Shown in pieces: positions 22,001 through 50,806 of a stretch of DNA of 64,000 nucleotides (position 1 is the stretch's first letter; each line of letters begins with the position of its first letter). The stretch covers positions 124,001 through 188,000 of the IMG/VR virus record IMGVR_UViG_3300031951_021456. One strand, given 5' to 3'. The position numbers and the translations under genes are program-made. Under the pieces are notes generated by a model that had not been told where the DNA came from, did no database searches, and worked only from the letters and a program-made list of their open reading frames with translations.

Positions 22001-24031
22001 GACATTATTACAATAAATTCATATAATAATTTTGATTATTGTGAATTGCCAAATGTAGATGGCATAAGTGTTTCGGATATTATTGATATTAGACCAAGAG
22101 TTTCAAATTTCACTCCCGTTGAAAATTCTAGATCTCCATTTGAATTTCTCGGTAGAAGTTTTTCATTAGATTACTTAAATCCCAAAAATATTTTAGCTTC
22201 TGATGAGTCTCTAAATTTAGGATATTCATTTTATTTACCTAGAATTGATAAATTATTTTTAACTTCAGAAGGAAATATTGAATTAATTTCAGGATATCCT
22301 AGTGAAACTCCACTATCGCCACAGTCTTTAGAAAATTCTATTGAAATTGCTACAATTAAATTACCTGCATATTTGTGTAATACATTAGATGGTCAAATTG
22401 ATCTTAAAATGTATAAGCGCTATCGGATGGAGGATATTAAAATTCTTGAAGATAGAATTTCTAACTTAGAATATTACACATCTTTGACCCTTCTTGAATC
22501 CGATACATCTAAATTATTCATCCCTGATAGTTTTGGTAATAATAGATTTAAGTCTGGGTTTTTCGTGGATAACTTTTCTACTACAATACCACAAAATAAA
22601 TTAGCTATTTTTAAAAATAGCATTGATATAACTGAAGGGGAGCTTCGCCCAACACCATTTACAACACACTTAGATTTAATTATAGCGACAAAATCAATTA
22701 TTGGCGTAGGAACTATTGCAGAAACAAATATTGATTTGCGTTTTAATGATGATTTATTGGGAACCAATGTTAAAAAAACTGGTAATCTTATTACATTAGA
22801 TTATGATCAAGTTGTTGAAATAACTCAACCATATTCAACTAGGGTTGAAAGTGTCTCTTCTTATAGAAGTAATATTTTTAGTGGGTCTCTCACGCTATAT
22901 CCATCAACAGATGTTTGGGCAGATCAAGTAAAGGTTTCAACGAATTATGTTGCAGCTAAAACTTTAGTAGCAACCCCCGAACAATTAGCAATAGCTCAGG
23001 CAAATTCGCAAAATGGTATGAATCCAGTCTTATGGGATCATGTTTCAAAAATTTGGACCGAAGGAAACACATTAATTAGTAGTCAAATTATTAATTATAT
23101 TCGTTCAAGAAATATTGAATTTGTTGGCAAAAGATTGAAACCATTTACGAAATTTTATGTATTTTTTGACAATAGGTCATTAGAAAAGTATATAATCCCC
23201 AAACTTATTGAAATTCAAATGGTATCTGGAACTTTCCAAGTTGGCGAGACTGTTATTGGCACAAATACATTAACAGGAGCGGCAATTAAATTTAGGACTG
23301 CCTCTAGCAATCACAAATATGGCCCCTATAATTCCCCAGAAACTATTTTTTCTATTAATCCATATTCACCTACAAATAACATTGCAGCCAATTATTCATC
23401 AACCTCCACTATTTTAAATGTTGATACTTTCAGTTTATCTAATATAGTTCAAAGTAGCTTTTCGGGTTATATTGATAGTGGTATGAGATTAAAGGGGCAA
23501 ACATCAAATGCAGAAGCAATCATTAAATCCGATATTAAACTGATAACAGATAATGTTGGGGATATTATTGGTTCTATTTTCATACCCAATGGTACTCCTA
23601 GTTTTGAGACTGGAAGCAAATTAGTTAAAATAACAAATAATTCAACTAACTCTACAGTAATTGGAGATGCAATTTCCTTTGCTGAAACTAATTTTATATC
23701 TTCTGGTAGTCTTAACAAATATCAGGAAAATATTGTTGGAACGGATCCACGGTCAGTTGTAACTCCAACTACACCAAATATAAGACCAGCTCCACCCACA
23801 GGAAGTCCACAAGTTCAAGTACAAAAGCCATGGCAAGATGGAGATATCTCAGTTAGGGGGAGTAATGTTTCAGATGACGAAGGAAATCGTTTAGTCAATA
23901 GCATAAATCAAAAGAATGATACTTCTTTCTCATTATCACAATTAAAAAGCGCTGCAGGTATAAATCAATTAAATAAAGTATCTGAGCTTAATAGAATAAA
24001 TGAAGCTGCAAGACGCTTAGCAGGAAGATAA
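19070..24031 (+). CDS. VrlC/DUF4815-like large virion structural protein, N-terminal part
   Basis: MPQETNLNITPYNDD, VQARELNNLQSILQNQIEQFG, YTAPGADR, RFKSGFFVDNF, YIRSRNIEF motifs. Confidence 0.8.
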   Translation: MPQETNLNITPYNDDYSQANAYYKILFKPNPVQARELNNLQSILQNQIEQFGNHIFKEGSVVIPGNLDYDDDLSAVELQNTYNGISIISYLQLLEGKTLKGKNSGVTATVVLVQTQNESIRGNSTIYVKYINSSMETGVSSLFADGEELIVEESAVNTLSTGETVIFTSGQTVAATISSNCNSIASSITVFDGIYFVRGTFVNVFKHTIILDQYSNKASFRVGFNINEKIITAYDDPGLFDNSSGFSNYTAPGADRFSFELILAKYDLNEEKPSNFVQLLEIQKGVLISNQNIPEYNTLAKELARRTFNESGNYYVNSPTISINNSLNDLLGNNGIYDLGEFTYDGNTPSDDLGIYKISPISAFVQGYEINTGVKLIDFQKPRTKKYLENQEVNYYTGPTLTLNRVYGSPFVGISTNYTLSLRDTRVGVSQIIAPGKEIGLARVYDFALESGSYSNTNANINEWDISLFDIQTYTEIALNQNLNNDLLYNIPCKIEGSSSGASGFIRYDSRNIGILTAYDINGSFIVGERLKFNGIENSRVSIAVTSYSLDDVKAVYGIVGTAFTFTADVKQVPKKTIGQVNITQSTGISTVTNSTSIFTDNAKLGNLVSFTTPGISTVNYATITGISPNSLTISGVTTVIGICEGKLPNLTINPTDFAILAASSSRSQDNTLYTKLPKDKVSDVNLTNSNITIRKQFDVVISANSIGPINSENDETFLPFDEERYALIREDGNTEALSTDKFVYTNGSKSLTINGLGTSTKAKLIASLRKINVREKVKYKNRIQTIIIDKSSYSSSGIGTTTINDGLIYGNYPYGTRVQDVELCLLSPDVTKIYGIFESSTINSASLPSLNLSSMSGPTNKVDDLLIGERIIGNTSECVAIYTKKSNDLEINITFLNSSRFLIGEIVTFQESGITAKINAISLGDRDITTHYSFETNQKSTIYDYSKLIRKPDKKEPTRKLTVVYESASFLTSDVGDIITINSYNNFDYCELPNVDGISVSDIIDIRPRVSNFTPVENSRSPFEFLGRSFSLDYLNPKNILASDESLNLGYSFYLPRIDKLFLTSEGNIELISGYPSETPLSPQSLENSIEIATIKLPAYLCNTLDGQIDLKMYKRYRMEDIKILEDRISNLEYYTSLTLLESDTSKLFIPDSFGNNRFKSGFFVDNFSTTIPQNKLAIFKNSIDITEGELRPTPFTTHLDLIIATKSIIGVGTIAETNIDLRFNDDLLGTNVKKTGNLITLDYDQVVEITQPYSTRVESVSSYRSNIFSGSLTLYPSTDVWADQVKVSTNYVAAKTLVATPEQLAIAQANSQNGMNPVLWDHVSKIWTEGNTLISSQIINYIRSRNIEFVGKRLKPFTKFYVFFDNRSLEKYIIPKLIEIQMVSGTFQVGETVIGTNTLTGAAIKFRTASSNHKYGPYNSPETIFSINPYSPTNNIAANYSSTSTILNVDTFSLSNIVQSSFSGYIDSGMRLKGQTSNAEAIIKSDIKLITDNVGDIIGSIFIPNGTPSFETGSKLVKITNNSTNSTVIGDAISFAETNFISSGSLNKYQENIVGTDPRSVVTPTTPNIRPAPPTGSPQVQVQKPWQDGDISVRGSNVSDDEGNRLVNSINQKNDTSFSLSQLKSAAGINQLNKVSELNRINEAARRLAGR

Positions 24032-38430: not shown

Positions 38431-40143
38431 ATGGCCAAATTATTTGGATTTTCTATTGAGGATAATGGTAAATTATCTAAATCTATTGTTTCACCAGTTC
38501 CACCAAACAATGATGATGGTTCAGATCATTATTTAACTACTGGTTTTTTTGGTTCTTATGTAGACATTGAAGGTGTCTATAGAACTGAATTTGATTTGAT
38601 TCGTAGATATAGAGAAATGTCACTTCATCAAGAAGTTGATGATGCCATTGAAGATATTGTAAATGAAGCAATTGTTTCTGACACAAATGATTCCCCAATT
38701 GAGATTGAACTTTCAAATCTTAATGCTAGTGATGGAATTAAAGAAGTAATTCGTAAAGAATTTAAAACGATTCTTGAGATGTTAGATTTTGATAGTAAAT
38801 GCCATGAGATCTTCAGGAATTGGTATATTGATGGAAGATTACATTACCACAAACTAATTGATCTTAAAGATCCCCATGCGGGTATTCAAGATATTCGCTA
38901 TATTGATTCAATGAAGATTAGGTTTGTTAGACACACTAAAAAGCAGAATAAAAATAACACGTTATCTAAGATTTATGGCGAAGAAAATGTAAATGAACAA
39001 ATTTTTCCAGAATTGGAAGAATATTTTGTCTATAACCCAAAGCAGACCTATCCAGTAGGAGCAGTAGATATGTCTGCTGGTTCTGAAAAGGGAATAAAAT
39101 TCACAAAAGACTCTATTGCTTATTGTACTTCTGGACTCGTTGATAGAAATAAAGGAACTGTTCTTTCTTGGATGAATAAAGCAATTAAACCTCTCAATCA
39201 ACTTAGAATGATTGAGGATAGTATTGTCATTTATCGTCTCAGTAGAAGCTCAGAAAAAAGAATTTTTTATATTGATGTTGGCAATATGCCAAAACCAAAA
39301 GCTGAGCAATTTCTTCGTGAAACTATGATGCGGTATCGCACCAAATTAAACTATAATAGCATTACAGGTGAAGTTGATAATTCTAGACGCTTTATGAGTC
39401 TTATGGAAGATTATTGGTTGCCTCGTAGAGAAGGTGGAAGAGGAACTGAAGTTACTACTCTTCCGGCGGGCAATAATCTCGGTGAATTAGCTGATTTAGA
39501 TTACTTCAAAAGAAACCTTTATAAATCACTAAATGTACCTGAAACTCGTATTGGCGGAGATAGTGGGTTCAACTTAGGTAGATCTACCGAAATATTAAGA
39601 GATGAAGTAAAATTTACAAAATTTGTAGGACGGCTGCGTAAGAGATTTTCTCGCTTATTTTTAGATCTTTTAGGAACACAATTAATCTTAAAAAACATTG
39701 TAACTCCAGAAGACTGGAAAAGAATGTCTGAGCATATTCAGTTTGATTTTCTATACGATAACCATTTTGCTGAACTTAAAGAATCTGAATTATTTACAGA
39801 CCGCTTAAATATGGTCTCAATGGCTCAACCATATGTTGGTAAATATTTTTCACAGGATTACCTCCGTAGAAAAATTTTACGGCAAACAGATGAAGAAATT
39901 ATTGAACAAGATAAGATAATTGAAAGCGAAATTGAAAATGGAGTTATCCCAGATCCAAATACTCCAATTGATCCACAAACTGGACAACCAATTTTAGATG
40001 TTGCTCCAGAAGAAATGCCACCACCTGAAGCTACACAAGCCACATCTGCAGTTGATAACATTAAAGGAGAATCTGGTAAAGTTCCAGTAACTCCAGATAT
40101 AAAGATTAAAGAGCCTAAAATGCCCAAAGGTGGTGAAATCTAA
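38431..40143 (+). CDS. gp20: Portal protein gp20
   Basis: WYIDGR, NQLRMIEDSIVIYR, FYIDVGNMPK, EDYWLPRREGGRGTEVTTLP. Confidence 0.96.
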   Translation: MAKLFGFSIEDNGKLSKSIVSPVPPNNDDGSDHYLTTGFFGSYVDIEGVYRTEFDLIRRYREMSLHQEVDDAIEDIVNEAIVSDTNDSPIEIELSNLNASDGIKEVIRKEFKTILEMLDFDSKCHEIFRNWYIDGRLHYHKLIDLKDPHAGIQDIRYIDSMKIRFVRHTKKQNKNNTLSKIYGEENVNEQIFPELEEYFVYNPKQTYPVGAVDMSAGSEKGIKFTKDSIAYCTSGLVDRNKGTVLSWMNKAIKPLNQLRMIEDSIVIYRLSRSSEKRIFYIDVGNMPKPKAEQFLRETMMRYRTKLNYNSITGEVDNSRRFMSLMEDYWLPRREGGRGTEVTTLPAGNNLGELADLDYFKRNLYKSLNVPETRIGGDSGFNLGRSTEILRDEVKFTKFVGRLRKRFSRLFLDLLGTQLILKNIVTPEDWKRMSEHIQFDFLYDNHFAELKESELFTDRLNMVSMAQPYVGKYFSQDYLRRKILRQTDEEIIEQDKIIESEIENGVIPDPNTPIDPQTGQPILDVAPEEMPPPEATQATSAVDNIKGESGKVPVTPDIKIKEPKMPKGGEI

Positions 40144-41054: not shown

Positions 41055-42283
41055 TGTCACATTTATATGAAGCTAGCAAAAATCAATATGATGCTTTCGG
41101 GCGACTAAAAATTTCAAATCCAGTTACACTTTTTGATTCTTCTCATAGATATAGAGATAATGGTCTATGGGCAACAAAAATAGTAGGTTCAGGAAGTACA
41201 GTGGGGTTTGTTACACATCAGGGTCTAGTAGATCTTACAATTGGAACTGGATCAACTTGTAAAATTATACGAGAAACTTTAAGAGTATTTTCATATCAAC
41301 CTGGCAAAGGATTGACTATTGATAATACTGGAGTTATGAATGATCATAAGGAAAATTTAACTCAAAGAATTGGTTACTTTAATGATGAAAATGGCATATT
41401 TTTTGAGCAAGAAAATTCAAACTTTTATATAGTAAAACGAAGTGGTGTTAGCGGCATAGTAACTGATACAAAAATACTACAATCTGAATGGAACATTGAC
41501 AATTTAACAGGAATTGGAGCATCAAATCCATCTGGGATAAAATTAAATCCATCAAAATCACAAATATTTTGGACTGATATTGAATGGCTTGGTGTAGGTA
41601 ATGTAAGAGCAGGATTTATTATTGATGGCAAAATAGTTCATACTCACACATTTAGACATGCAAATATAATTGATTCTACATACATGTCTACAGCTAGTCT
41701 TCCGATTCGGTATGAAATTTTTAATACTGGAATTACGACAAGTTCTAGTTCAATGAAGCAAATTTGTTCAACTGTTATTTCAGATGGTGGATATGAATTA
41801 AGAGGTCTACAACAACCTATTGGAACACCTATATTATCACCAGTATCATTACCAAGTTCTGGAGTATTCTATCCAGTTGTAACGATAAGATTAAAGACAA
41901 GTCCAAATCGTTTGGATGCTATTGTCATTTTAACTGCTCTATCAATTATGGGTATTACCAATAATTCCAATTATAATTGGAAACTTGTAAGCAGTGGAAT
42001 CACAACTGGGGGAACTTGGATAGATGCAGGAATAGATTCAGCAGTTGAATATAAAATTGATGGAGGTGGAATAAGTGGAGGAAGAGCATTGGGTCTTGGT
42101 TATTTTAGTGCTTCCAATCAAAATAATACAACTATAAATATTTTAAGAGAGGCGCTATTTAAGTTCCAATTGGAGCGAAATGGACTTACTAATACTCCCC
42201 ATGAATTATCTTTAGCTTTATCGTCTAGTTCAGATAATTCTCTTGTTCATGCTTCTCTAGATTGGGAAGAAATTAGTAGATAA
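41054..42283 (+). CDS. Putative virion structural protein (beta-rich)
   Basis: DAFGRLKISNPVTLFDS, YQPGKG, WLGVGNVRAG, SSSMKQICSTVISDGG. Confidence 0.65.
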   Translation: MSHLYEASKNQYDAFGRLKISNPVTLFDSSHRYRDNGLWATKIVGSGSTVGFVTHQGLVDLTIGTGSTCKIIRETLRVFSYQPGKGLTIDNTGVMNDHKENLTQRIGYFNDENGIFFEQENSNFYIVKRSGVSGIVTDTKILQSEWNIDNLTGIGASNPSGIKLNPSKSQIFWTDIEWLGVGNVRAGFIIDGKIVHTHTFRHANIIDSTYMSTASLPIRYEIFNTGITTSSSSMKQICSTVISDGGYELRGLQQPIGTPILSPVSLPSSGVFYPVVTIRLKTSPNRLDAIVILTALSIMGITNNSNYNWKLVSSGITTGGTWIDAGIDSAVEYKIDGGGISGGRALGLGYFSASNQNNTTINILREALFKFQLERNGLTNTPHELSLALSSSSDNSLVHASLDWEEISR

Positions 42284-42291
42284 TATAAATA
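42284..42291 (+). promoter_or_regulatory. Late promoter TATAAATA
   Basis: Exact T4 late consensus, followed by an AGGAG RBS. Confidence 0.65.
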
Positions 42292-42313
42292 ATAGGTAAA
42301 GGAGACTATATTC

Positions 42314-42580
42314 ATGCAGATTACTAAAGTCATTGAAACTCAAATTTCAACTCCAACAACTGTTGGAACTGCAACTAGCTTAAATTCTGCAACTTGTGTA
42401 AGGCTTTGTAATGATACTGGTGGAGAAATTGTTGTAAGTATTTCAACATCTGTTGGTGCTGCAACTTCTAATAGTTTCACTTTACCTCGCTATAGTGTGG
42501 AGTTTTTACAGAAATCTTCATCTGATGTTATTTTTACAAATTCAGCAATTAAAGCTAATAAAGTAGGATTTACCAACTAA
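42314..42580 (+). CDS. Small structural-module protein
   Basis: TPTTVGTATSLNSATCVRL; late promoter and RBS. Confidence 0.65.
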   Translation: MQITKVIETQISTPTTVGTATSLNSATCVRLCNDTGGEIVVSISTSVGAATSNSFTLPRYSVEFLQKSSSDVIFTNSAIKANKVGFTN

Positions 42581-42581
42581 A

Positions 42582-42914
42582 ATGGCAACTCAAGAGATAT
42601 TGGGATTAACAATTGAAAAGGGTGAAGATTTTTCAACTTCATTTGTAATTGAATCTTTTGATGGAAATCTTCTTGATTTGACTAATTATACTGCTATATC
42701 TAAAATTAGAAAATATCCCTCTTCGCCAAATTTTAAATCATTTGAAACTGAAGTTTTAGGTTCTACTGGATATGTTAATCTTATTATGAGTAGATTAGTG
42801 ACTGCCACTCTCTCTTCAGGTAGAAACTATTTTGATGTTCTTCTTACAAATGGCATTGAAACAATTAAGCCAATAAAAGGAACAATTATGGTGGAGGAAA
42901 CTGCATCATTATGA
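42582..42914 (+). CDS. Putative fibre-anchoring/adaptor protein
   Basis: LTIEKGEDF...DLTNYTAISKIRK...GRNYFDVLL pattern of small adaptors preceding fibre genes. Confidence 0.55.
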   Translation: MATQEILGLTIEKGEDFSTSFVIESFDGNLLDLTNYTAISKIRKYPSSPNFKSFETEVLGSTGYVNLIMSRLVTATLSSGRNYFDVLLTNGIETIKPIKGTIMVEETASL

Positions 42915-44761
42915 GTGGAGATATTAGAGTTAGATTTGGACAACAAAGCAAATTTAAAGTGAGCACAGTGCAAGATCCAATTGCTGAAAGTGCTTACAAT
43001 ATTTACACGCAAAGTTCTGGGATTAATACATCATTCTATTTAACTTTTGTTGGCACTAACACTACTTCTTTAACAAAAAATAGAGTTTATACAAGTTCAG
43101 GACTTTCATATAATCCTTCTAGTAATACAATTTCATATGCAAATACTTCTTTAAATTTTAATAATACGCAAACTAATCAAAGTATTGTTAGTTTTGGAAC
43201 TACTGATGTTACATTTTCAAATAGTGTAATAATCAATGAAGATCTTAGAGTTTTGGGGAATTTTGATCTTTCTAATGTATCAATAGGAAATGTTAGTGGT
43301 GGTTCTACTGGAGATTTACTCTATCAATATTCTTCTGGAATAACATCATTTTTACCAGCAGGGCAATTTGATTATGTTTTAACATCAAATGGGCCAGGAA
43401 CAATACCTTCTTGGAAGCAAAGTTCTGGCACTGGTATTTCTTCATCTGTAGATTATGCAACATCTGCAGGGATTGCAACTTATGCAACATCTGCAGGGAT
43501 TGCAACTTATGCAACATCTGCAGGGATTGCAACTGCCATCGCCCACAAAGCTACTCACTCAACTGGTGGCTCCGATGCTCTTACTGCAACTGACATTGGC
43601 GCCGATCCCCAAGGCACAGCCTCCAGCGCCATCGCGGCCCACCTGCTGGCGGCCAGCCACCACGACCCCGCCACCCTGGCCGCCAACCTGCAGGGGATCC
43701 TCTCCCTGTCCGGCCAAGAGCTGGCGGCCGTCTCCCCCGGCGCGGGGCTGACGCGGCTGCACTACTGGAATCCAGCCACATCACGGCTGGAGTTCCTGGG
43801 CCTTGGCAACACCCTGTCCATCGCCAGCGGGCAGCTCAACGCAGTGGGCGGGTCGCCCGGTGGCAGTGACGGTCAGCTCCAGTGGAATTCCGGGGGCGCA
43901 TTTGCGGGCCTGCCAACAAGTGTAGTTGACGGAAGCGGAAATATAACAATCTCCGGCCGGATTACATCTGCGTGCAATGGCGCTGCGAGCGCTCCGGCGT
44001 TATCAATAACAGGGGGGTTATTTGCTGGTGGCACGGGAGCAACAACGACTCCGAATATTTTAGTGCAACCACCGGGAGCGCCAGTCGTTAGCTCTTGGAG
44101 TACAAGCGGGACAGTTTTAGGAGTCAATATGCCATCTGGTTTTAATGGTAGATTTATTGATTTTTTAACTAATAATACTCGGGTTTTTTCTCTTTCTCAC
44201 AATGGAACATTAAACCTAAATGGAATTATAGGAAACATGAGCAGTAGCTCAATAATTTCGCTAGGAACTTTATCCATAACACTTCAAGGCGGCTCAAATT
44301 TAGCGTTGTCTGGCGGTTTATTATCACTATCACAGGGCGCAACTAGCCATACACTAGAAGTGTACGATAGATCCATTAGCACTACCGATTATCATCGCAT
44401 TGCTATTAAGACTGCGCGAGCAACTCTCTCGAACATCTCCGGGCCATCGGTTACGGCCGCCGCTTTAATTCCTGCCGGCGCCATGGTGATGGGCGTCACG
44501 TCTAAAATAACAACGGCGTTTGGCACTTCAAACGGTGCGACTGGTTATCAAATTGGTACATTGGCGGCTCCAGGCAGATTCGGATCTATTGTTGGCACAG
44601 CATTGGGAACGACAACAGACAACAGGAATTGGCCTCCTGGCCAATTAGCTGAAAATTTTCCCTCTGCAACAGATATATTGTTGACGGCAACAGGGGGAAC
44701 CTTTGACGGGACTGGCGTTATTTATATTAGTATCCAGTACATCACAGGTCAATCTGATTAA
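42911..44761 (+). CDS. Mosaic tail fibre / receptor-binding-like protein
   Basis: G/S/T-rich; GGSTGDLLYQ and PGGSDGQLQWNSGGAFAG fibre motifs; YATSAGIAT repeats; abrupt GC shift at 43535. Confidence 0.7.
   Translation: MSGDIRVRFGQQSKFKVSTVQDPIAESAYNIYTQSSGINTSFYLTFVGTNTTSLTKNRVYTSSGLSYNPSSNTISYANTSLNFNNTQTNQSIVSFGTTDVTFSNSVIINEDLRVLGNFDLSNVSIGNVSGGSTGDLLYQYSSGITSFLPAGQFDYVLTSNGPGTIPSWKQSSGTGISSSVDYATSAGIATYATSAGIATYATSAGIATAIAHKATHSTGGSDALTATDIGADPQGTASSAIAAHLLAASHHDPATLAANLQGILSLSGQELAAVSPGAGLTRLHYWNPATSRLEFLGLGNTLSIASGQLNAVGGSPGGSDGQLQWNSGGAFAGLPTSVVDGSGNITISGRITSACNGAASAPALSITGGLFAGGTGATTTPNILVQPPGAPVVSSWSTSGTVLGVNMPSGFNGRFIDFLTNNTRVFSLSHNGTLNLNGIIGNMSSSSIISLGTLSITLQGGSNLALSGGLLSLSQGATSHTLEVYDRSISTTDYHRIAIKTARATLSNISGPSVTAAALIPAGAMVMGVTSKITTAFGTSNGATGYQIGTLAAPGRFGSIVGTALGTTTDNRNWPPGQLAENFPSATDILLTATGGTFDGTGVIYISIQYITGQSD
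43454..43534 (+). repeat. Perfect 27-bp tandem repeat x3 (TATGCAACATCTGCAGGGATTGCAACT)
   Basis: Three identical units encoding YATSAGIAT. Confidence 0.95.
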
Positions 44762-44766
44762 ACCAA

Positions 44767-45174
44767 ATGACTCACCAAATCACAGTCCAAATCTCACGCC
44801 GCGCCTATGGAGGCTTGGTTGCCGCGGCAAATGAAGCAGGAAAATCGCCTCAGCAAATGGCTCTAGATCTGCTTGAGGAGATTGGCCTAAACTACGCAAA
44901 TCTGCCTCAATACTTAGTAGGATCGCTAACAACCGCACAGTTTATAGATAGGCTAACCCCTCAAGAATATGCGACGATTAAAGAAGTCGCGCAATCTAAT
45001 GCACAAGTCGAAGAGTTGAAAAACCGTTTGCTTGAACGCGAACGCATAGCGTTAGACGAGGAGCCGTTAGTCGAAGGCCTGCTGGCGCTTGCAGCCGCTG
45101 GACTGCTTCAGACTGGGCGGCCGGCGGAGCTTGTTGATTTTGTTATTCCTGAGCCACTGCACAATCAATCATGA
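44767..45174 (+). CDS. Putative tail-fibre assembly chaperone-like protein
   Basis: Directly follows fibre gene; QFIDRLTPQE and GLLALAAAGLLQTGRPAEL motifs; elevated GC like the fibre C-terminus. Confidence 0.5.
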   Translation: MTHQITVQISRRAYGGLVAAANEAGKSPQQMALDLLEEIGLNYANLPQYLVGSLTTAQFIDRLTPQEYATIKEVAQSNAQVEELKNRLLERERIALDEEPLVEGLLALAAAGLLQTGRPAELVDFVIPEPLHNQS

Positions 45175-45379
45175 TTGACGACTACCACATGCCCCCCGCC
45201 TTCCTGCAGGCGCTGCAGGAGGCCTTCGACGCCGAGTAGAATCCCCTCATGGCCCCACTCCTCCCAGCTTGCCGCATATAAACATTTCCCCTGAAATCGG
45301 CGGCGCTTTGCTCCAAAAAGCGCATGAATTCAAGCTTCCGGGTGATTTTATTGCGGCTCTGATGCCTGGCCAGTCGTGA
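45171..45379 (+). pseudogene. Two stacked GC-rich gene-tail remnants
   Basis: MIDDYHMPPAFLQALQEAFDAE* (45171-45239) and, in another frame without ATG, ...AHEFKLPGDFIAALMPGQS* (ends 45379) share [YF][HK][ML]PxxFxxAL. Confidence 0.4.
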
Positions 45380-45520
45380 CGGGAAAACTTCTAGCGATTC
45401 CATGGAGAATTTCATTTTATACTAAGTCTAGAAGCTCTTGAACTTCACTCAGTTTAATTATTGCAACAATATAATTTAATAGACTGTATTTCCGCTATAA
45501 TAGATACAAATTAAACATCA

Positions 45521-45527
45521 ATAAATA
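45521..45527 (+). promoter_or_regulatory. Late promoter box ATAAATA
   Basis: Upstream of gp21. Confidence 0.6.
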
Positions 45528-45548
45528 GTTCATAATATCTTAAAATTA

Positions 45549-46196
45549 ATGAAATTATTTACAGAAGAAGCACAAGAAGTGAAAATGCTCACTGAAAGTG
45601 TGAAAGGAAAGAAAAAACTCTTTATTGAAGGAGTATTCTGTCAAGCAGAAATAAAGAATAGAAATGGTAGAATTTATCCGTTTCAAGTTCTTAATAATGC
45701 TGTGAATTATTATGTTGAGAATTTCGTTAAATTTAATAGAGCTGTAGGAGAGTTAAACCATCCGGCTACTCCGACAATCAACTATGACAGAGTTTCACAT
45801 TTAATTGAATCTCTTACTCCTAAGGGAAATTGTTTTTATGGTAGAGCAAGAGTATTAAATACTCCAATGGGTCAAATTGTAACAAACCTACATGAAGAGG
45901 GTATTCGTTTTGGTGTTTCATCTAGAGCTGTTGGGTCTTTAAGACCAACAAATGAAGGTGTTAATATTGTTGGTGATGATTTAATGTTTTCAACTGTTGC
46001 AGATATTGTTCATGATCCTTCATGTACTTCAGCATTTGTTGAAGGTATTATGGAAGGTAAAAATTGGTATTATGATGTAACTAAAAAAGAATGGTTAATT
46101 GAAAATACTAAAAAAACTATCAATAAGTTAGTAGATTCGCATCAACTAGAAGAAAAGAAACTTCAATTATTTGAAAGTTTTCTTAATCATATTTGA
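45549..46196 (+). CDS. gp21: Prohead core protease gp21
   Basis: LFIEGVFCQAEIKNRNGRIYP, GELNHP, FGVSSRAVGSL, DIVHDPS. Confidence 0.95.
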   Translation: MKLFTEEAQEVKMLTESVKGKKKLFIEGVFCQAEIKNRNGRIYPFQVLNNAVNYYVENFVKFNRAVGELNHPATPTINYDRVSHLIESLTPKGNCFYGRARVLNTPMGQIVTNLHEEGIRFGVSSRAVGSLRPTNEGVNIVGDDLMFSTVADIVHDPSCTSAFVEGIMEGKNWYYDVTKKEWLIENTKKTINKLVDSHQLEEKKLQLFESFLNHI

Positions 46197-46213
46197 TCAA
46201 ACATTTTACTTTA

Positions 46214-46220
46214 CTAAATA
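46214..46220 (+). promoter_or_regulatory. Late promoter box CTAAATA
   Basis: Upstream of gp22. Confidence 0.5.
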
Positions 46221-46264
46221 AACATAGATTAACAAATTAATTAGGGTTAAAAGGAGAAATTAAA

Positions 46265-47419
46265 ATGCCTCGTGGTACAAATTTACAAGAAATGGACGCA
46301 AAAAATTCTCAATCTAAAACTGCAGTGAATCAGAATGCAAAACCTGCAGAACCAATGCAGCACTTAAAGGATAATCTGCCCCCTGGTCAAACTGCAGGCT
46401 GGGAAGATCTTGGTGGACCTACTCCAGAAAATTATCGTAATGATGATGACTCTGCAAAGTTTAAAGATCCTGCAGGTCGCCTATCTCAAGTGAAAAATGT
46501 AGTCACTAAAAATGCAAAGCCTGCAGACCCTATGCCACATATGAAAAAAGGTGCAGTTAAAGAATCTGCTGAAGATGAAGATGAAGAGCTTCTAGAAGAT
46601 CAAGAGGATGAAGAGCTTGATGAATTAGAAGAAGATGAATCTGAAGAAGATCTTGATGAAACTGAAGAAGATGATGAAGTCTATGAAGAGGATTTTAACG
46701 TTGAAGAAGATGTTAATGCTCTTATGGCTGGTGAAAATCTCTCTGAGGAATTTCAAGAAAAGGCAAGAACCATCTTTGAGGCTGCTCTAAAAACTCGTGC
46801 AACTCAATTAAAAGAAGCTCTTGAAGCTCAATATGAAGAAGCACTCTTAGAAGAAGTTGAAGCCATTAAAGCGGATCTTGAAGAGCGTGTTGATTCTTAT
46901 CTTGAATATGTAGCCGAAGAGTGGCTAGAAGAAAATCGTCTCCAAGTTGAGACTGGAATTAAAGTTAAGGTCACTGAATCCTTCTTAGTAGGTCTTAAGG
47001 GACTTTGTGAACAACATTATGTGCAAATGCCTGAAGAAAAGTATGACGTGCTGGAAGGCATGGTAGAAAAACTAGATGAAATGGAAGATAAACTCAACGA
47101 GCAAATTGAGAAGAACATCCGCTTAAACCAAAGACTCTCTGAGTCGGTTGCAGATAGGATTCTTGATGAGGTATCTGAAGGACTTGCAGTCACTCAGAAA
47201 GAGAAGCTCGCCACACTTTCTGAAAGTGTTGAGTTTGAAAGTGAATCAAGCTATAGAGAAAAGCTTTTAACTCTTAAGGAATCTTATTTCCCTGCTCGTA
47301 GAGTTAATAAGCAGGCTAATTTAGAGAATCTGTCTGAAGATTTTGTCTATTCCTCAGAACCTGTTTCTGGCACAATGGCTCAATATCTCGCAGCTCTTCA
47401 AATGATTGGCCAAAGTTGA
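46265..47419 (+). CDS. gp22: Prohead core scaffold gp22
   Basis: Acidic coiled coil; LSEEFQEKARTIFEAA, VDSYLEYVAEEW, LTLKESYF; between gp21 and gp23. Confidence 0.92.
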   Translation: MPRGTNLQEMDAKNSQSKTAVNQNAKPAEPMQHLKDNLPPGQTAGWEDLGGPTPENYRNDDDSAKFKDPAGRLSQVKNVVTKNAKPADPMPHMKKGAVKESAEDEDEELLEDQEDEELDELEEDESEEDLDETEEDDEVYEEDFNVEEDVNALMAGENLSEEFQEKARTIFEAALKTRATQLKEALEAQYEEALLEEVEAIKADLEERVDSYLEYVAEEWLEENRLQVETGIKVKVTESFLVGLKGLCEQHYVQMPEEKYDVLEGMVEKLDEMEDKLNEQIEKNIRLNQRLSESVADRILDEVSEGLAVTQKEKLATLSESVEFESESSYREKLLTLKESYFPARRVNKQANLENLSEDFVYSSEPVSGTMAQYLAALQMIGQS

Positions 47420-48901: not shown

Positions 48902-48927
48902 AGAGGGCATCAAAAGCCCTCTTTTTT
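48902..48927 (+). terminator. Intrinsic terminator after gp23
   Basis: AGAGGGC-atcaaaa-GCCCTCT followed by a T run. Confidence 0.85.
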
Positions 48928-49711
48928 ATTGGCTTTCAACTTTTCTACATTTGTATCCTTTATGGTGATTCCTTCTCCCAGCAGCTACAGAATACATTTT
49001 AGATCTACTAATATTTTTAGTAATACAGTATTCTGATAAATTTATCACAAATTCTTCAGTACCTTCTGGCGTTATAACTATCCATTCTTTTTGTTTGGAC
49101 TCAATATTTTTTCTTAATATATCCTCTTGCAAATTATATTCTCTAAGTTTTTGTTTTGTTTCTTCTTTAACATATCTACCCCTAGCTTTTTCTCTAATTT
49201 TTTGTCTATGCTCTTCAGTTTTTGGTTTACCTCTATTAGCTTCACTTATTAATCTTTTTGATTTTTCTGAATGCTTTTTACCAGTATTTAATTTTGAAAG
49301 TTTACGTTTAGTTTCTTCACTATGTTTTTTACCATAAAACCCATTTCGTTCCCCAAGCATCCTTTCAGGTCTATTAGCAATAAAAATATTAAGAAGAGTT
49401 CCACCTTCATCAAATCCAATTCTACCATATTTAATAATTTCTTGTTCTTCAAGATTATAGGCATCCTCTTCCCTTAAATCTACACTTATTTTAATAACCA
49501 TGGGTTCAATACCAGATGCTCTAAGATTTTTAATATGTCCTGTTAATCTTTTATTTTTGGTATAGCCAGCAGCAGGAGTTAAATGTTGAAAACATCTTGG
49601 TCCTTTACCTTTACCTACATAAAAAGGTGTTCCTTTTATAGGATTAATAATATGATAGACATAATAAACTGGGCATTCATCGTAATTATTTTCTTTTTCT
49701 TTTTTAAACAT
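48926..49711 (-). CDS. Free-standing GIY-YIG homing endonuclease with NUMOD3 repeats
   Basis: YYVYHIINP...FYVGKG...R...E...LLN catalytic module; repeats GKKHSEETKRKLS, GKKHSEKSKRLIS, KPKTEEHRQKI. Confidence 0.85.
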   Translation of the reverse strand: MFKKEKENNYDECPVYYVYHIINPIKGTPFYVGKGKGPRCFQHLTPAAGYTKNKRLTGHIKNLRASGIEPMVIKISVDLREEDAYNLEEQEIIKYGRIGFDEGGTLLNIFIANRPERMLGERNGFYGKKHSEETKRKLSKLNTGKKHSEKSKRLISEANRGKPKTEEHRQKIREKARGRYVKEETKQKLREYNLQEDILRKNIESKQKEWIVITPEGTEEFVINLSEYCITKNISRSKMYSVAAGRRNHHKGYKCRKVESQ

Positions 49712-49870: not shown

Positions 49871-50806
49871 ATGAATGTTTTATCTCTTTTTGATAGTATT
49901 AGTTGTGGTCAAGTTGCTTTAGAAAGAGCAAAAATAAAGGTTGACAAATACTATGCAAGTGAAATTGAACCAATGGCAATTAAAGTCACTCAACATAATT
50001 TTCCAAATACAATTCAGTTAGGTGACATAAGAAACTTAAATGTAACTGATAAGATTGATTTAATTATTGGTGGTTCACCTTGTCAGTCTTTTTCATTTGG
50101 TGGCACTAAAACAGGAATGATTACAGAAGAGAAAATTGAGATCACAAATTTAGAACAATATCTTAGTCTCAAAGAAAACAATTTTCAGTTCAATGGTCAG
50201 TCTTATCTTTTTTAGGAATATGTAAGATTGATTAAAGAACTTAAGCCCACTTATTTTTTACTTGAAAACGTAAAGATGCAAAATAAGTGGAAGGTTATTA
50301 TAACAAATTCATTAGGAGTGAAACCAATATTAATAAACAGCAAATTAGTTTCAGCTCAATCAAGAGAAAGATTGTATTGGACAAATATTCCAGATATAAC
50401 ACAACCAGAAGATTCTGAGATTTATCTGGAATCAATTCTACAAAATGACACTGTTCACAAATATTTACCAAAAACTAGACTTGATTATAGTAACTACAAC
50501 AAGTCTAAAGTAAATAAAACGGTACATAAAAATACTGGTATTCATATTGGAAGCAGCAGAAAATTCACAAATCACTTAAGAAATGATGGAAAGTCATTTA
50601 CTTTAAGAAAAGTAAACCCAAATGGAATATTAGATGAAAATTTTAATATTCGCTACTTTACTCCAATAGAAGCTGAGAGACTACAAACTCTTTCTGATAA
50701 TTATACTCTTGTTGATAATGCCACAAATAGTAAGAGATATGAACTAATAGGAAATGGTTGGACTGTTGATGTCATTGCTCATATTTTTAAGAATATTAAT
50801 CAATAA
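49871..50806 (+). pseudogene. C5-cytosine DNA methyltransferase interrupted by in-frame TAG at 50213-50215
   Basis: Motif IV GGSPCQSFS, motif VI LLENV, motif VIII AQSRERLYW, motif X IGNGWTV; the two track ORFs are in one frame: GQSYLF*EYVRLIKE. Confidence 0.85.

What the first reader, a model, noticed from the sequence alone, without database searches (positions are those of the whole stretch)
42911..44761. Tail-fibre gene switches to high GC exactly after a 3x27-bp repeat
Seen: hand counts give 16/60 GC at 43081-43140 but 47/60 and 44/60 at 43621-43740. The new segment begins at 43535, the first base after three perfect YATSAGIAT repeats, with AHKATHSTGGSDALTATDIGAD. GC falls to intermediate after about 43900, suggesting more than one graft. 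Inference: recent receptor-binding-domain capture from a high-GC donor (host prophage or co-infecting phage), with the repeat as recombination point; the donor GC hints at a high-GC host such as Synechococcus/Cyanobium.
Basis: partly seen in the sequence, partly recalled or inferred. Interest (0 to 1): 0.6.

Follow-up and report, generated by a model that had tools for sequence, protein, structure and literature searches.

The report
Borrowed high-GC tip on phage fibre
A large, AT-rich T4-like freshwater phage carries a fibre gene whose outer two thirds, plus the small gene behind it, were taken recently from GC-rich phages living in the same lakes; this is a clean but ordinary case of phages swapping host-recognition parts.

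Summary
Three perfect 27-bp repeats (43453-43534) are followed by the strongest GC outlier in the 248-kb genome, up to 0.71-0.73 against a mean of 0.334.

It runs from 43535 to about 45392. It covers the distal two thirds of the 616-aa fibre gene, a 135-aa downstream gene, a 22-aa gene remnant and a small conserved ORF.

It is not an assembly chimera. Five assemblies and a Logan contig from another run carry the same junction, with two or three repeat copies.

The backbone is a freshwater T4-like cyanophage. A syntenic relative is colinear up to 42921 and again from 45522, with a different fibre cassette in between.

The GC-rich part is 73-93% identical in DNA to contigs of 53-64% GC phages, some from the same metagenomes. 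Third-position GC is 0.80-0.97 with no AT-ward drift, so the transfer is recent.

The tip (aa ~474-616) is homologous to the lectin-like "foot" of the roseophage R4C tail fibre.

The stepwise GC fall also occurs in the high-GC relatives, so it does not prove several grafts. The homology patchwork does show several recombination events.

This is a known kind of event, mosaic tail fibres. Interest is moderate to low.

The parts
42582..42914 (+). Conserved 110-aa backbone gene just upstream. Its stop overlaps the fibre gene's start (ATGA). It forms the left anchor of the variable slot.
   Evidence: It matches phrog_3304 and phrog_1084, E about 1e-14. The same gene is present in the syntenic relative L021. 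DNA colinearity with L021 (81%) ends at window 42921.
42911..44761 (+). Fibre gene, 616 aa (P0001): one intact frame made of native and foreign parts.
   Evidence: It has no Pfam or PHROG hit of its own. Its positional homologue P0093 in L021 matches phrog_6942 'tail fiber protein', E=2.6e-42.
42911..43452 (+). Native N-terminal part (aa 1-181), the presumed virion-attachment end.
   Evidence: GC3 is 0.03-0.27, like the neighbouring genes. The first ~80 aa are about 56% identical to P0093, encoded at the same slot of the T4-like relative L021.
43453..43534 (+). Three perfect 27-bp tandem repeats (YATSAGIAT x3, aa 182-208). Copy number varies in the population (2 or 3).
   Evidence: Two copies occur in L002 and L003, three in L009, L010 and L018. 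The same 9-aa unit forms long arrays in B3 gp279, in P0093 and in dozens of other fibre proteins, followed there by unrelated distal domains.
43535..43597 (+). First foreign-type segment (aa 209-229): the motif AHKATHSTGGSDALTATDIGA, of intermediate GC.
   Evidence: The motif HK[AT]THxTGG[ST]DALTxxDIGA is unique in this genome. In IMG/VR it occurs in 20 of 21 non-self loci with GC 0.58-0.68. GC3 is about 0.38-0.47.
43598..43855 (+). Extremely GC-rich conserved connector module (about aa 230-315).
   Evidence: GC is 0.72 and GC3 0.80-0.97. It is 75-81% identical in protein to P0011 and P0013-P0016, and 82-84% identical in DNA to L005-L007 and L057. There is no AT-ward substitution bias.
43856..44115 (+). 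Shaft module (about aa 316-401: GQLQWNSGGAFAGL...DGSGNITISGR...).
   Evidence: It is shared with P0003-P0007, about 30 further metagenomic proteins and cyanophage KBS-S-2A (47%). DNA identity to L005 runs to 43998.
44116..44330 (+). Poorly conserved, N/S/I/L-rich stretch (about aa 402-473), the AT-richer dip inside the graft.
   Evidence: GC is 0.28-0.38 and GC3 0.13-0.33. It aligns to P0003 only with long gaps. The homologous stretch of the 64%-GC contig L004 dips in the same way, to GC 0.37 and GC3 0.27-0.33.
44331..44761 (+). C-terminal 'foot' (about aa 474-616), the presumed receptor-binding tip.
   Evidence: It is 64% identical to P0003 and 65% to L025. A profile matches PDB 8gtc chain S residues 120-216 at E=4.9e-11. 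That chain is the R4C tail fibre, whose residues 118-230 form a lectin-like 8-stranded barrel (PMC10276861). The top Foldseek hit of a low-confidence model is 8gtc_T, E=1.9e-6.
44767..45174 (+). 135-aa gene carried along with the distal fibre part (phrog_25252 family, function unknown).
   Evidence: GC3 is 0.37-0.63. Homologues lie directly downstream of the fibre gene in L004, L005-L007, L008 and L025, at 36-39% identity. A profile finds 653 cluster representatives, and 33 of 40 members match phrog_25252. The AF2 model has pLDDT 78 and is helical, with a weak ribbon-helix-helix-like N-terminus. The best viral match is S-CBWM1 gp90, in a tail-gene region.
45171..45239 (+). 22-aa ORF: a remnant of the 3' end of a different (L057-type, 148-aa) fibre-accessory gene.
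   Evidence: Window 45182-45266 is 93% identical to L057 and 85.5% to L056. There the peptide ...HMPPAFLQALQDAFDAE* ends a 148- or 153-aa gene. A Logan contig of run X7 shares 45185-45232 and runs on unlike on both sides.
45231..45392 (+). Right-hand end of the graft: an L005-type small conserved ORF (39 aa in L005). In the window its ATG is put out of frame by an indel.
   Evidence: It is 84% identical in DNA to L005-L007, directly behind their 135-aa gene. Differences are mostly synonymous in the + frame, by my count on the alignment and the translations. The GC change point lies at 45408 (45381-45415).
45393..45521 (.). AT-rich spacer up to the right anchor of the variable slot.
   Evidence: Similarity to the relative L021 resumes at 45522. 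A Logan contig of a related phage in run X7 also joins at 45529.
45549..46196 (+). gp21 prohead protease, a backbone gene on the right of the slot.
   Evidence: Pfam Peptidase_S77, E=2.8e-36.

Best explanation
The window belongs to a 248-kb, 33%-GC freshwater T4-like cyanophage (Kyanoviridae-like). Between a conserved 110-aa gene and the gp21 protease gene lies a replaceable slot that holds a fibre gene and its accessory genes.

In this lineage the fibre keeps its own AT-rich N-terminal end (aa 1-181) and a short remnant of the family's 9-aa repeat array. Everything distal to the array was taken from GC-rich phages, probably siphoviruses of the same picocyanobacterial host. This includes a connector module, a shaft, a lectin-like foot, the 135-aa gene behind the fibre gene, and about 220 bp of donor downstream sequence.

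The joint lies within a few codons of the end of the repeat array. It was an illegitimate or microhomology join, because the GC-rich relatives have no such repeat.

The donor fragment was itself a patchwork. Its two ends resemble the L005/L057-type phages. Its middle (foot and 135-aa gene) resembles the L004/L025 type. A 22-aa stump of a displaced accessory gene remains.

Shown here: the anatomy, the foreign origin, the direction of transfer, its recency, and its presence in several independent assemblies.

Inferred: the new foot binds a carbohydrate receptor and changed host recognition; the two kinds of phage share a host; the 135-aa protein serves the fibre.
For: Backbone. Portal, gp21, gp22 and gp23 are recognised. 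The capsid protein is 75% identical to those of freshwater Synechococcus phages B3 and B23.

Slot. The relative L021 is colinear at 81-87% up to 42921 and from 45522, with another fibre (P0093) and two other genes in between.

Foreign origin. This is the GC outlier of the genome, with GC3 of 0.80-0.97 against 0.03-0.27. DNA identity is 82% (43613-43998) and 84% (45231-45389) to L005-L007, and 84% and 93% to L057, all contigs of 58-63% GC. The motif at 43535-43597 is typical of high-GC viral contigs.

Direction and recency. In the high-GC contigs the module fits its surroundings. There is no AT-ward bias in the window lineage.

Not an artefact. The junction is identical in assemblies from five samples, with 2 or 3 repeat copies. 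A Logan contig of run X7 covers 43480-43643 without a difference.

Co-occurrence. L005/L020 and L018 come from metagenome 3300032116. L006/L019, L057 and L010 come from 3300031857.

Foot. PDB 8gtc_S at E=4.9e-11, with the domain description in PMC10276861.

Unit. Shaft, foot and a 135-aa-family gene occur together in L004 and L025.
Against: No contig was found that carries the whole 43535-45392 block. The best pieces are only 73-93% identical, so the actual donor is unsampled and the number and order of events are unknown.

The host of neither phage type is known; shared host is inferred from co-occurrence and distant cultured relatives.

This genome lacks psbA, hli, CP12, bilin reductase and NblA, so cyanobacterial host assignment rests on capsid similarity alone.

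The location of the protein on the virion (tail, neck or head fibre) is not shown.

The fold model of the foot has low confidence (pLDDT 49).

No expression data were available; all runs found were DNA.
Confidence: 0.8

Rival explanations
1. Several separate grafts entered the T4-like genome one after another: first an L005/L057-like distal part with its accessory gene, later a replacement of its middle by an L004/L025-like foot plus the 135-aa gene. This replaces the single transfer of an already mosaic donor fragment.
For: The ends of the block match L005/L057-type contigs and the middle matches L004/L025-type contigs. A 22-aa stump of an L057-type gene sits behind the present 135-aa gene. 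GC3 differs between segments.
Against: High-GC relatives show the same GC3 profile along their own fibre genes: 0.83-0.93, then 0.3-0.6. They also swap the same modules among themselves. The patchwork can therefore predate the transfer. All sampled copies of this phage carry the finished arrangement.
Confidence: 0.3
2. The donor was a prophage in the host chromosome rather than a co-infecting phage.
For: The donor-like contig L008 encodes an ERF-type recombinase (weak Pfam hit), and L004 a XisAC-related protein, features common in temperate phages.
Against: Two pattern scans of one genome for each of 185,579 bacterial and archaeal species found no relative of the distal part. All relatives are viral or metagenomic contigs. 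Sensitivity is limited to exact short peptide patterns.
Confidence: 0.1
3. The junction is an assembly chimera that joins a T4-like phage and a GC-rich phage at a shared repeat.
For: Short-read graphs break at the repeat. Logan contigs of run X6 end at 43482 and 43509, and depth at the repeat is 5-15 times that of the flanks.
Against: The same junction is found in assemblies from five samples, at 99.6-100% identity over 10-13 kb: L018 (probably the window's own assembly), L009, L010, L002 and L003. A Logan contig of a further run spans 43480-43643 exactly. The right-hand junction at about 45392 has no repeat. The GC-rich relatives do not contain the repeat at all. The frame stays open across the joint.
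Confidence: 0.02
4. The GC-rich stretch is native, and its composition follows from an Ala/Gly/Pro-rich protein or from selection, not from transfer. Alternatively, transfer went from the T4-like phage to the GC-rich phages.
For: The stretch is rich in A, G, P and S residues.
Against: Third codon positions carry the signal, at 0.80-0.97. The non-coding or remnant right end is GC-rich too. The syntenic relative L021 has a different gene content there. In the GC-rich contigs the module matches its genomic background.
Confidence: 0.03

Closest known systems
Mosaic tail-fibre genes exchanged between unrelated phages (P2 gpH/gpG, T-even gp37/gp38). The literature is summarised in PMC1079782, which cites Haggard-Ljungquist et al. 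1992 and Tetart et al.
   Same: A conserved virion-proximal N-terminus is joined to a swapped distal receptor-binding part. The downstream accessory gene travels with the tip. Exchange crosses phage families. Repeats or conserved motifs sit at the module borders.
   Different: The exchange bridges a GC gap of about 30 percentage points (33% against 53-64%) and is still unameliorated. The join to the native repeat array is not homologous. The accessory gene belongs to the uncharacterised phrog_25252 family, not a known Tfa or gp38 chaperone.
Tail fibre of roseophage vB_DshS-R4C (PDB 8GTC chains S/T; PMC10276861) and the related RcGTA tail fibre.
   Same: The C-terminal 'foot' is shared: profile E=4.9e-11 over chain residues 120-216, with the conserved stretch SVTA-ALIP--A-V-GVTS. 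In R4C this is a lectin-like 8-stranded barrel proposed to bind carbohydrate.
   Different: Only the foot is shared. R4C's rod and knob (residues 1-117) have no counterpart here. This protein is 616 aa with a different shaft, and it sits in a myovirus.
Fibre locus between portal (g20) and g21 in freshwater cyanomyoviruses B3/B23 (MN695334; PMC7171214) and in the metagenomic relative L021.
   Same: The slot is the same. The fibre genes carry AGIAT(F/Y)A 9-aa repeat arrays. The genomes are similar in size (244-250 kb), are low in GC and lack psbA.
   Different: B3 gp279 and P0093 have long imperfect arrays and other distal domains. Here only three perfect units remain, followed by a foreign distal part.
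Diversity-generating retroelement targets (Mtd-type receptor-binding tips).
   Same: Both are variable C-terminal receptor-binding tips. Atlas structural neighbours of the foot include clusters that carry Mtd_N.
   Different: The genome has no reverse transcriptase and the region has no template/variable repeat pair.

Membership tests
Horizontally exchanged (mosaic) phage tail-fibre gene | The proximal part is shared with close relatives at the same locus, while the distal part is not. | tested here: met
   L021 is colinear up to 42921 and from 45522. P0093 shares only the first ~80 aa and the repeat motif.
Horizontally exchanged (mosaic) phage tail-fibre gene | The distal part is homologous to fibres of unrelated phages. 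| tested here: met
   DNA identity is 73-84% to contigs L005-L008 and L052-L057 of 53-63% GC. Protein identity is 50-65% to L004 and L025. There are also hits to KBS-S-2A and to roseophage fibres.
Horizontally exchanged (mosaic) phage tail-fibre gene | Compositional signature of foreign origin. | tested here: met
   GC3 is 0.80-0.97 against 0.03-0.27, and this is the genome's top GC outlier.
Horizontally exchanged (mosaic) phage tail-fibre gene | The exchange alters host range. | not testable with these tools
   There is no isolate and no host data.
R4C/RcGTA-type tail-fibre foot domain | Sequence homology to the foot (8GTC chain S residues 118-230). | tested here: met
   phmmer E=7.9e-8 for aa 497-604; profile E=4.9e-11.
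R4C/RcGTA-type tail-fibre foot domain | Eight-stranded lectin-like beta-barrel fold. | tested here: inconclusive
   The AF2 model of aa 400-616 has mean pLDDT 49, and 56-72 over the foot, which is all-beta. The top Foldseek hit is 8gtc_T at E=1.9e-6, TM 0.43. The Atlas model has TM 0.77 to a DUF2793 cluster.
R4C/RcGTA-type tail-fibre foot domain | Rod and knob domains N-terminal to the foot. | tested here: not met
   Only chain residues 120-217 align. So this protein shares a domain with that fibre and is not a member of the whole-protein family.
R4C/RcGTA-type tail-fibre foot domain | Carbohydrate binding. | not testable with these tools
   Even for R4C it is only proposed from the fold (PMC10276861).
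T4-like cyanophage (Kyanoviridae) backbone | T4-type portal, prohead protease, scaffold and gp23 capsid genes in the canonical order, with the closest capsids among cyanomyoviruses. | tested here: met
   Pfam E-values run from 1e-36 to 1e-181. The capsid is 75% identical to B3 and B23, and 68-74% to other Synechococcus and Prochlorococcus myoviruses.
T4-like cyanophage (Kyanoviridae) backbone | Photosynthesis-related auxiliary genes (common in the group but not defining). | tested here: not met
   No psbA/psbD, hli, CP12, bilin reductase or NblA. B3 and B23 also lack psbA (PMC7171214).
phrog_25252 (135-aa gene) | Match to the family profile. | tested here: inconclusive
   The window's own protein scores E=0.0025. 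33 of 40 profile-search relatives match, the best at 1.8e-12.
Tail-fibre assembly chaperone (Tfa/gp38-like) for the 135-aa gene | Homology to a known chaperone family, or a predicted complex with the fibre tip. | tested here: not met
   No Pfam, NCBIfam or PDB match. The complex prediction gave no answer. The only support is conserved adjacency downstream of fibre genes in five contig types.
Ribbon-helix-helix DNA-binding protein, for the N-terminus of the 135-aa gene product | A strand-helix-helix fold of about 45 aa that matches RHH proteins. | tested here: inconclusive
   Foldseek matches RHH antitoxins and CopG/Arc over 38-50 columns, with TM by target 0.7-0.8 but E of 0.5-2. Single family members hit RHH_4 or NikA-like weakly.
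Diversity-generating retroelement target | A reverse transcriptase and a template repeat near the variable tip. | tested here: not met
   No RVT_1 in the genome. No matching repeat pair.

The most novel reading that the evidence does not exclude
The GC-rich connector module (43598-43855) and the conserved stretch at the gene end and next gene start (about 45182-45392) may be portable recombination anchors. They would bracket interchangeable 'distal fibre plus accessory gene' cassettes in freshwater picocyanobacterial phages. If both anchors came along into a T4-like myovirus, that phage could now swap tips by homologous recombination with co-infecting siphoviruses. This would amount to a shared tip-exchange system across phage families and across a 30-point GC gap.
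Probability: 0.25. Interest if true: 0.55.

Novelty: new member of a known kind. Interest (0 to 1): 0.35.

Why it matters
The joint is unusually clean and datable, with a GC3 of 0.9 inside a genome of GC3 about 0.2. It shows that large T4-like freshwater cyanophages and GC-rich siphovirus-like phages in the same lakes exchange host-recognition parts, which implies that they meet in one host.

It gives a testable handle for host prediction of an uncultured 248-kb phage: express the foot domain and test its binding to Synechococcus/Cyanobium surfaces.

It extends the R4C/RcGTA-type lectin foot to cyanophage-like myoviruses.

It also flags phrog_25252, a widespread uncharacterised family with 653 cluster representatives, as a fibre-linked gene.

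It does not reveal a new mechanism. Fibre mosaicism has been known since the 1990s.

Tried and rejected
**Searches that found nothing or too little**
- DNA searches of the cultured-phage collection with the block found nothing. The whole 8-kb region hit only gp22.
- The word-index search with the 135-aa protein found only near-identical fragments.
- Two genome-contig scans for prophage donors found no relative.
- blastn of the 63-bp motif segment against the 21 motif-bearing viral loci gave no closer donor.

**Structure and binding**
- The complex prediction used three copies of aa 330-616 with the 135-aa protein. It gave no verdict (score 0.00) and counts neither for nor against binding.
- The AF2 model of aa 400-616 has low confidence (pLDDT 49), so fold matches other than 8gtc are not used.
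- Foldseek of the 135-aa model against the PDB gave no match at E<=0.001.

**Alternative kinds of element**
- DGR was rejected: no reverse transcriptase and no template repeat.
- An RNA element was rejected: no Rfam match at E<=0.1 in 42000-46500.
- The minus-strand ORF 45182-45415 (77 aa) is taken as spurious. The relatives' annotations do not call it, and conservation fits the plus-strand small ORF.

**Limits of the read data**
- Only Logan contigs, not raw reads, were available. Read-level support and the ratio of 2- to 3-copy variants could not be measured.
Full report
**What is in the sequence**

The frame 42911-44761 (+) is open and encodes 616 aa. Tandem Repeats Finder reports three perfect 27-bp units at 43453-43534. 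In frame they read YATSAGIAT three times (aa 182-208), followed at 43535 by AIAHKATHSTGGSDALTATDIGAD.

GC in 120-nt windows changes as follows:
- 0.23-0.29 at 43060-43240
- 0.73 at 43600-43780
- 0.52-0.55 at 43900-44140
- 0.28 at 44140-44260
- 0.44-0.60 up to about 45400

The window is positions 124001-188000 of a 247,932-bp virus record. Its 300-nt windows have mean GC 0.334 and sd 0.046, and the maximum of 0.713 lies here.

Likelihood change points put the left edge at 43518 (support 43491-43599), with a sharper second step at 43598. The right edge is at 45408 (45381-45415). The GC-rich block, however, extends about 640 bases beyond the gene. It covers a 135-aa ORF (44767-45174) and about 220 further bases.

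**The genome around it**

The neighbours are T4-type genes:
- portal gp20 (38431-40143)
- prohead protease gp21 (45549-46196)
- scaffold gp22
- capsid gp23

The capsid protein is 75% identical to those of Synechococcus phages B3 and B23 and 68-74% identical to other cyanomyoviruses. B3 and B23 are 244-kb freshwater myoviruses of a Synechococcus-Cyanobium host, with 34.8% GC and no psbA (PMC7171214). This genome likewise has no psbA/psbD, hli, CP12, bilin reductase or NblA. Public runs that hold the stretch are labelled freshwater or lake metagenomes, or "fungus metagenome".

**It is not an assembly artefact**

The same junction occurs at 99.6-100% identity over 10-13 kb in the following assemblies:
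- two IMG/VR contigs from metagenomes 3300031758 and 3300031857
- a 249,543-bp contig of 3300032116, probably the window's own assembly
- two ENA assemblies (249,370 bp and 9,822 bp)

The ENA copies have two repeat units and the JGI copies three. L002 differs from the window by that one 27-bp unit and nothing else over 13 kb. L003's eight mismatches lie in the portal and scaffold genes, not in the block.

Only Logan contigs, not raw reads, were on hand. One contig of run X7 covers 43480-43643 without a difference. Other contigs break at the repeat, where summed depth is 5-15 times that of the flanks. The 27-bp word is therefore shared by many co-occurring phages.

**A replaceable slot**

A syntenic relative, L021 (243.5-kb contig), has the same gene order from sheath to capsid. 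Its DNA is 81-87% identical up to window 42921 and again from 45522. In between it carries another fibre gene (P0093, 719 aa; phrog_6942 "tail fiber protein", E=2.6e-42) and two unrelated genes.

P0093 shares only the first ~80 aa (about 56%) and the repeat motif with the window's protein. Its own GC3 also rises, from 0.07-0.2 to 0.4-0.5, behind its long repeat array. A Logan contig of another related phage joins at 45529. B3 has fibre-like genes in the same slot, including gp279 with a long AGIAT(F/Y)A array.

**Origin of the GC-rich block**

Third-position GC separates the parts of the fibre gene:

| Segment | GC3 |
|---|---|
| aa 1-180 | 0.03-0.27 |
| 43535-43597 | 0.38-0.47 |
| 43586-43855 | 0.80-0.97 |
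| 43856-44080 | 0.37-0.50 |
| 44081-44350 | 0.13-0.33 |
| foot | 0.33-0.57 |
| 135-aa gene | 0.37-0.63 |
| neighbouring genes | 0.14-0.35 |

Homologues lie on viral or metagenomic contigs of 53-64% GC:
- L005-L007 (GC 58-60%) match 43613-43998 at 82% and 45231-45389 at 84% in DNA.
- L057 (GC 63%) matches 43613-43770 at 84% and 45182-45266 at 93%.
- L008 and L052-L056 match at 73-78%.
- L004 (GC 64%) and L025 (GC 53%) share the shaft and the foot at 50-65% protein identity. Each has a 135-aa-family gene directly downstream.

The motif HK[AT]THxTGG[ST]DALTxxDIGA, encoded at 43535-43597, is unique in this genome. In IMG/VR it occurs in 20 of 21 non-self loci with GC 0.58-0.68.

With L008 as outgroup, the window lineage shows 11 GC-to-AT and 16 AT-to-GC changes over 43598-43998. 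There is no drift towards the AT-rich genome, so the block's residence there is short.

L005's capsid protein is nearest (30-33%) to cyanosiphoviruses PSS2, S-CBS2 and S-CRES. L004 carries a weak NblA hit. L005/L020 and the T4-like contig L018 come from the same metagenome. So do L006, L057 and L010. Two scans of bacterial and archaeal genomes found no relative.

**One graft or several**

That argument fails. The fibre genes of the GC-rich contigs show the same profile: GC3 of 0.83-0.93 in the connector module and 0.3-0.6 distally, with a dip at the poorly conserved N/S/I/L-rich stretch.

Homology does show a patchwork:
- The two ends of the block are L005/L057-like.
- The foot is L004/L025-like.
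- The 135-aa gene is only 36-39% identical to the copies in L004, L005, L008 and L025; one cluster representative from the profile search is 51% identical.
- Behind it sits a 22-aa ORF (45171-45239) that is the 3' stump of an L057-type 148-aa gene (...HMPPAFLQALQ[D/E]AFDAE*).
- An L005-type small ORF follows, whose ATG is out of frame here.

The GC-rich phages shuffle the same modules among themselves. So these events may predate the transfer into the T4-like genome. I cannot order them.

**Role of the repeat**

The 9-aa unit is native to this phage group (B3 gp279, P0093). It occurs in dozens of fibre proteins, where arrays are followed by unrelated distal domains. It thus marks a module border that tolerates different partners.

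The GC-rich relatives have no such array, so the join to them was not a homologous crossover in the repeat. The three units are identical at all 27 bases and vary in number between otherwise identical genomes. This points to recent slippage.

**Function**

The C-terminal ~140 aa match PDB 8gtc chain S (phmmer E=7.9e-8; profile E=4.9e-11, chain residues 120-216). That chain is deposited as "ribonuclease III". It is the tail fibre of roseophage R4C. Its residues 118-230 form a lectin-like eight-stranded barrel, the "foot", proposed to bind carbohydrate, and it is related to the RcGTA fibre (PMC10276861).

My AF2 model of aa 400-616 is poor (pLDDT 49), but it is all-beta in the foot, and its best Foldseek hit is 8gtc_T (E=1.9e-6). 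The ESM Atlas model aligns to DUF2793 clusters at TM 0.77. I infer that the foot is the receptor-binding tip and that its capture changed what the phage binds. This is not shown.

The 135-aa protein belongs to a sizeable family: 653 cluster representatives, and 33 of 40 members match phrog_25252, function unknown. It sits directly behind fibre genes that carry this shaft. Fibres with another distal part (L056, L057) have a different 148-153-aa gene there. This co-variation suggests a fibre accessory role.

Its model (pLDDT 78) is helical with a weak ribbon-helix-helix-like N-terminus. A DNA-binding role is therefore not excluded. The complex prediction gave no verdict.

**Comparison and verdict**

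This is mosaic tail-fibre evolution, known from P2 and T-even phages and long assumed for cyanophages (PMC1079782). It is not a DGR and not an RNA element.

Four things are particular here:
- the size of the GC gap and the lack of amelioration
- the crossing between a T4-like myovirus and siphovirus-like phages in the same lakes
- the R4C/RcGTA-type foot in a cyanophage-like myovirus
- the preserved scars of earlier swaps

Novelty is a new member of a known kind, and interest is about 0.35. The most novel reading not excluded is that the two conserved ends of the block serve as anchors for continued tip exchange between these phage families (probability about 0.25).

Noticed in passing
window 43453-43534; L002:6543-6596; L003:5106-5159: The 27-bp unit is present in 3 copies in the JGI assemblies and 2 in the ENA assemblies of otherwise identical genomes. 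This is a copy-number polymorphism inside a fibre gene. Summed Logan contig depth at the repeat is 5-15 times that of the flanks, so many other phages in the samples share the unit.
   Followed up: partly
L021:2092-4239 against window 38431-40143: The portal gene of the relative L021 is 715 aa against 570 aa here. The extra ~150 aa (a 454-nt gap in the DNA alignment) give a weak Pfam Intein_splicing hit (E=0.0012), suggesting a possible intein in gp20 of the relative.
   Followed up: partly
window 48926-49711 (-), 49871-50215 (+), 50228-50806 (+): A GIY-YIG/NUMOD3 homing-endonuclease-like gene sits right behind gp23. Next to it a C5 cytosine DNA methylase is split into two ORFs, covering profile positions 1-87 and 97-323. 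The same split is present in L002.
   Followed up: partly
window 45231-45392; L005:8597-8744: A small ORF (39 aa in L005, MAPTPHINISPEIGGALLQKAHECRLPGDFIAALMPDQS) is conserved, with mostly synonymous differences. In the window an indel of about 10 nt puts its ATG out of frame, and only a TTG start would keep it. Its function is unknown.
   Followed up: partly
L021:8700-10650: The sister lineage's slot also has raised GC (0.45-0.53 against 0.33 in the flanks). The GC3 of its fibre gene rises from about 0.1 to 0.4-0.5 right behind its long repeat array. This looks like a second, independent foreign distal part at the same locus.
   Followed up: partly
whole record G000 (247,932 bp): No psbA/psbD, hli, CP12, bilin reductase or NblA was found in a genome whose capsid groups with cyanomyoviruses. 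IMG/VR classes the record as 'provirus', although its gene content is that of a T4-like lytic phage and sister contigs are 249.4-249.5 kb.
   Followed up: partly
window 6387-17498 (+) and 19070-24031 (+): Two very large ORFs of 3,703 aa and 1,653 aa lie upstream of the tail and head genes. They are presumably giant structural or fibre proteins like those described for P-SSM2 and P-SSM4. They were not examined.
   Followed up: no
PDB 8gtc chains S/T; phage records MK882925, KT266805 and others: The R4C-type tail-fibre protein is deposited and annotated as 'ribonuclease III' in the PDB and in several roseophage genomes. The R4C structure paper describes it as the tail fibre, so the name looks like an annotation error that has spread.
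   Followed up: yes
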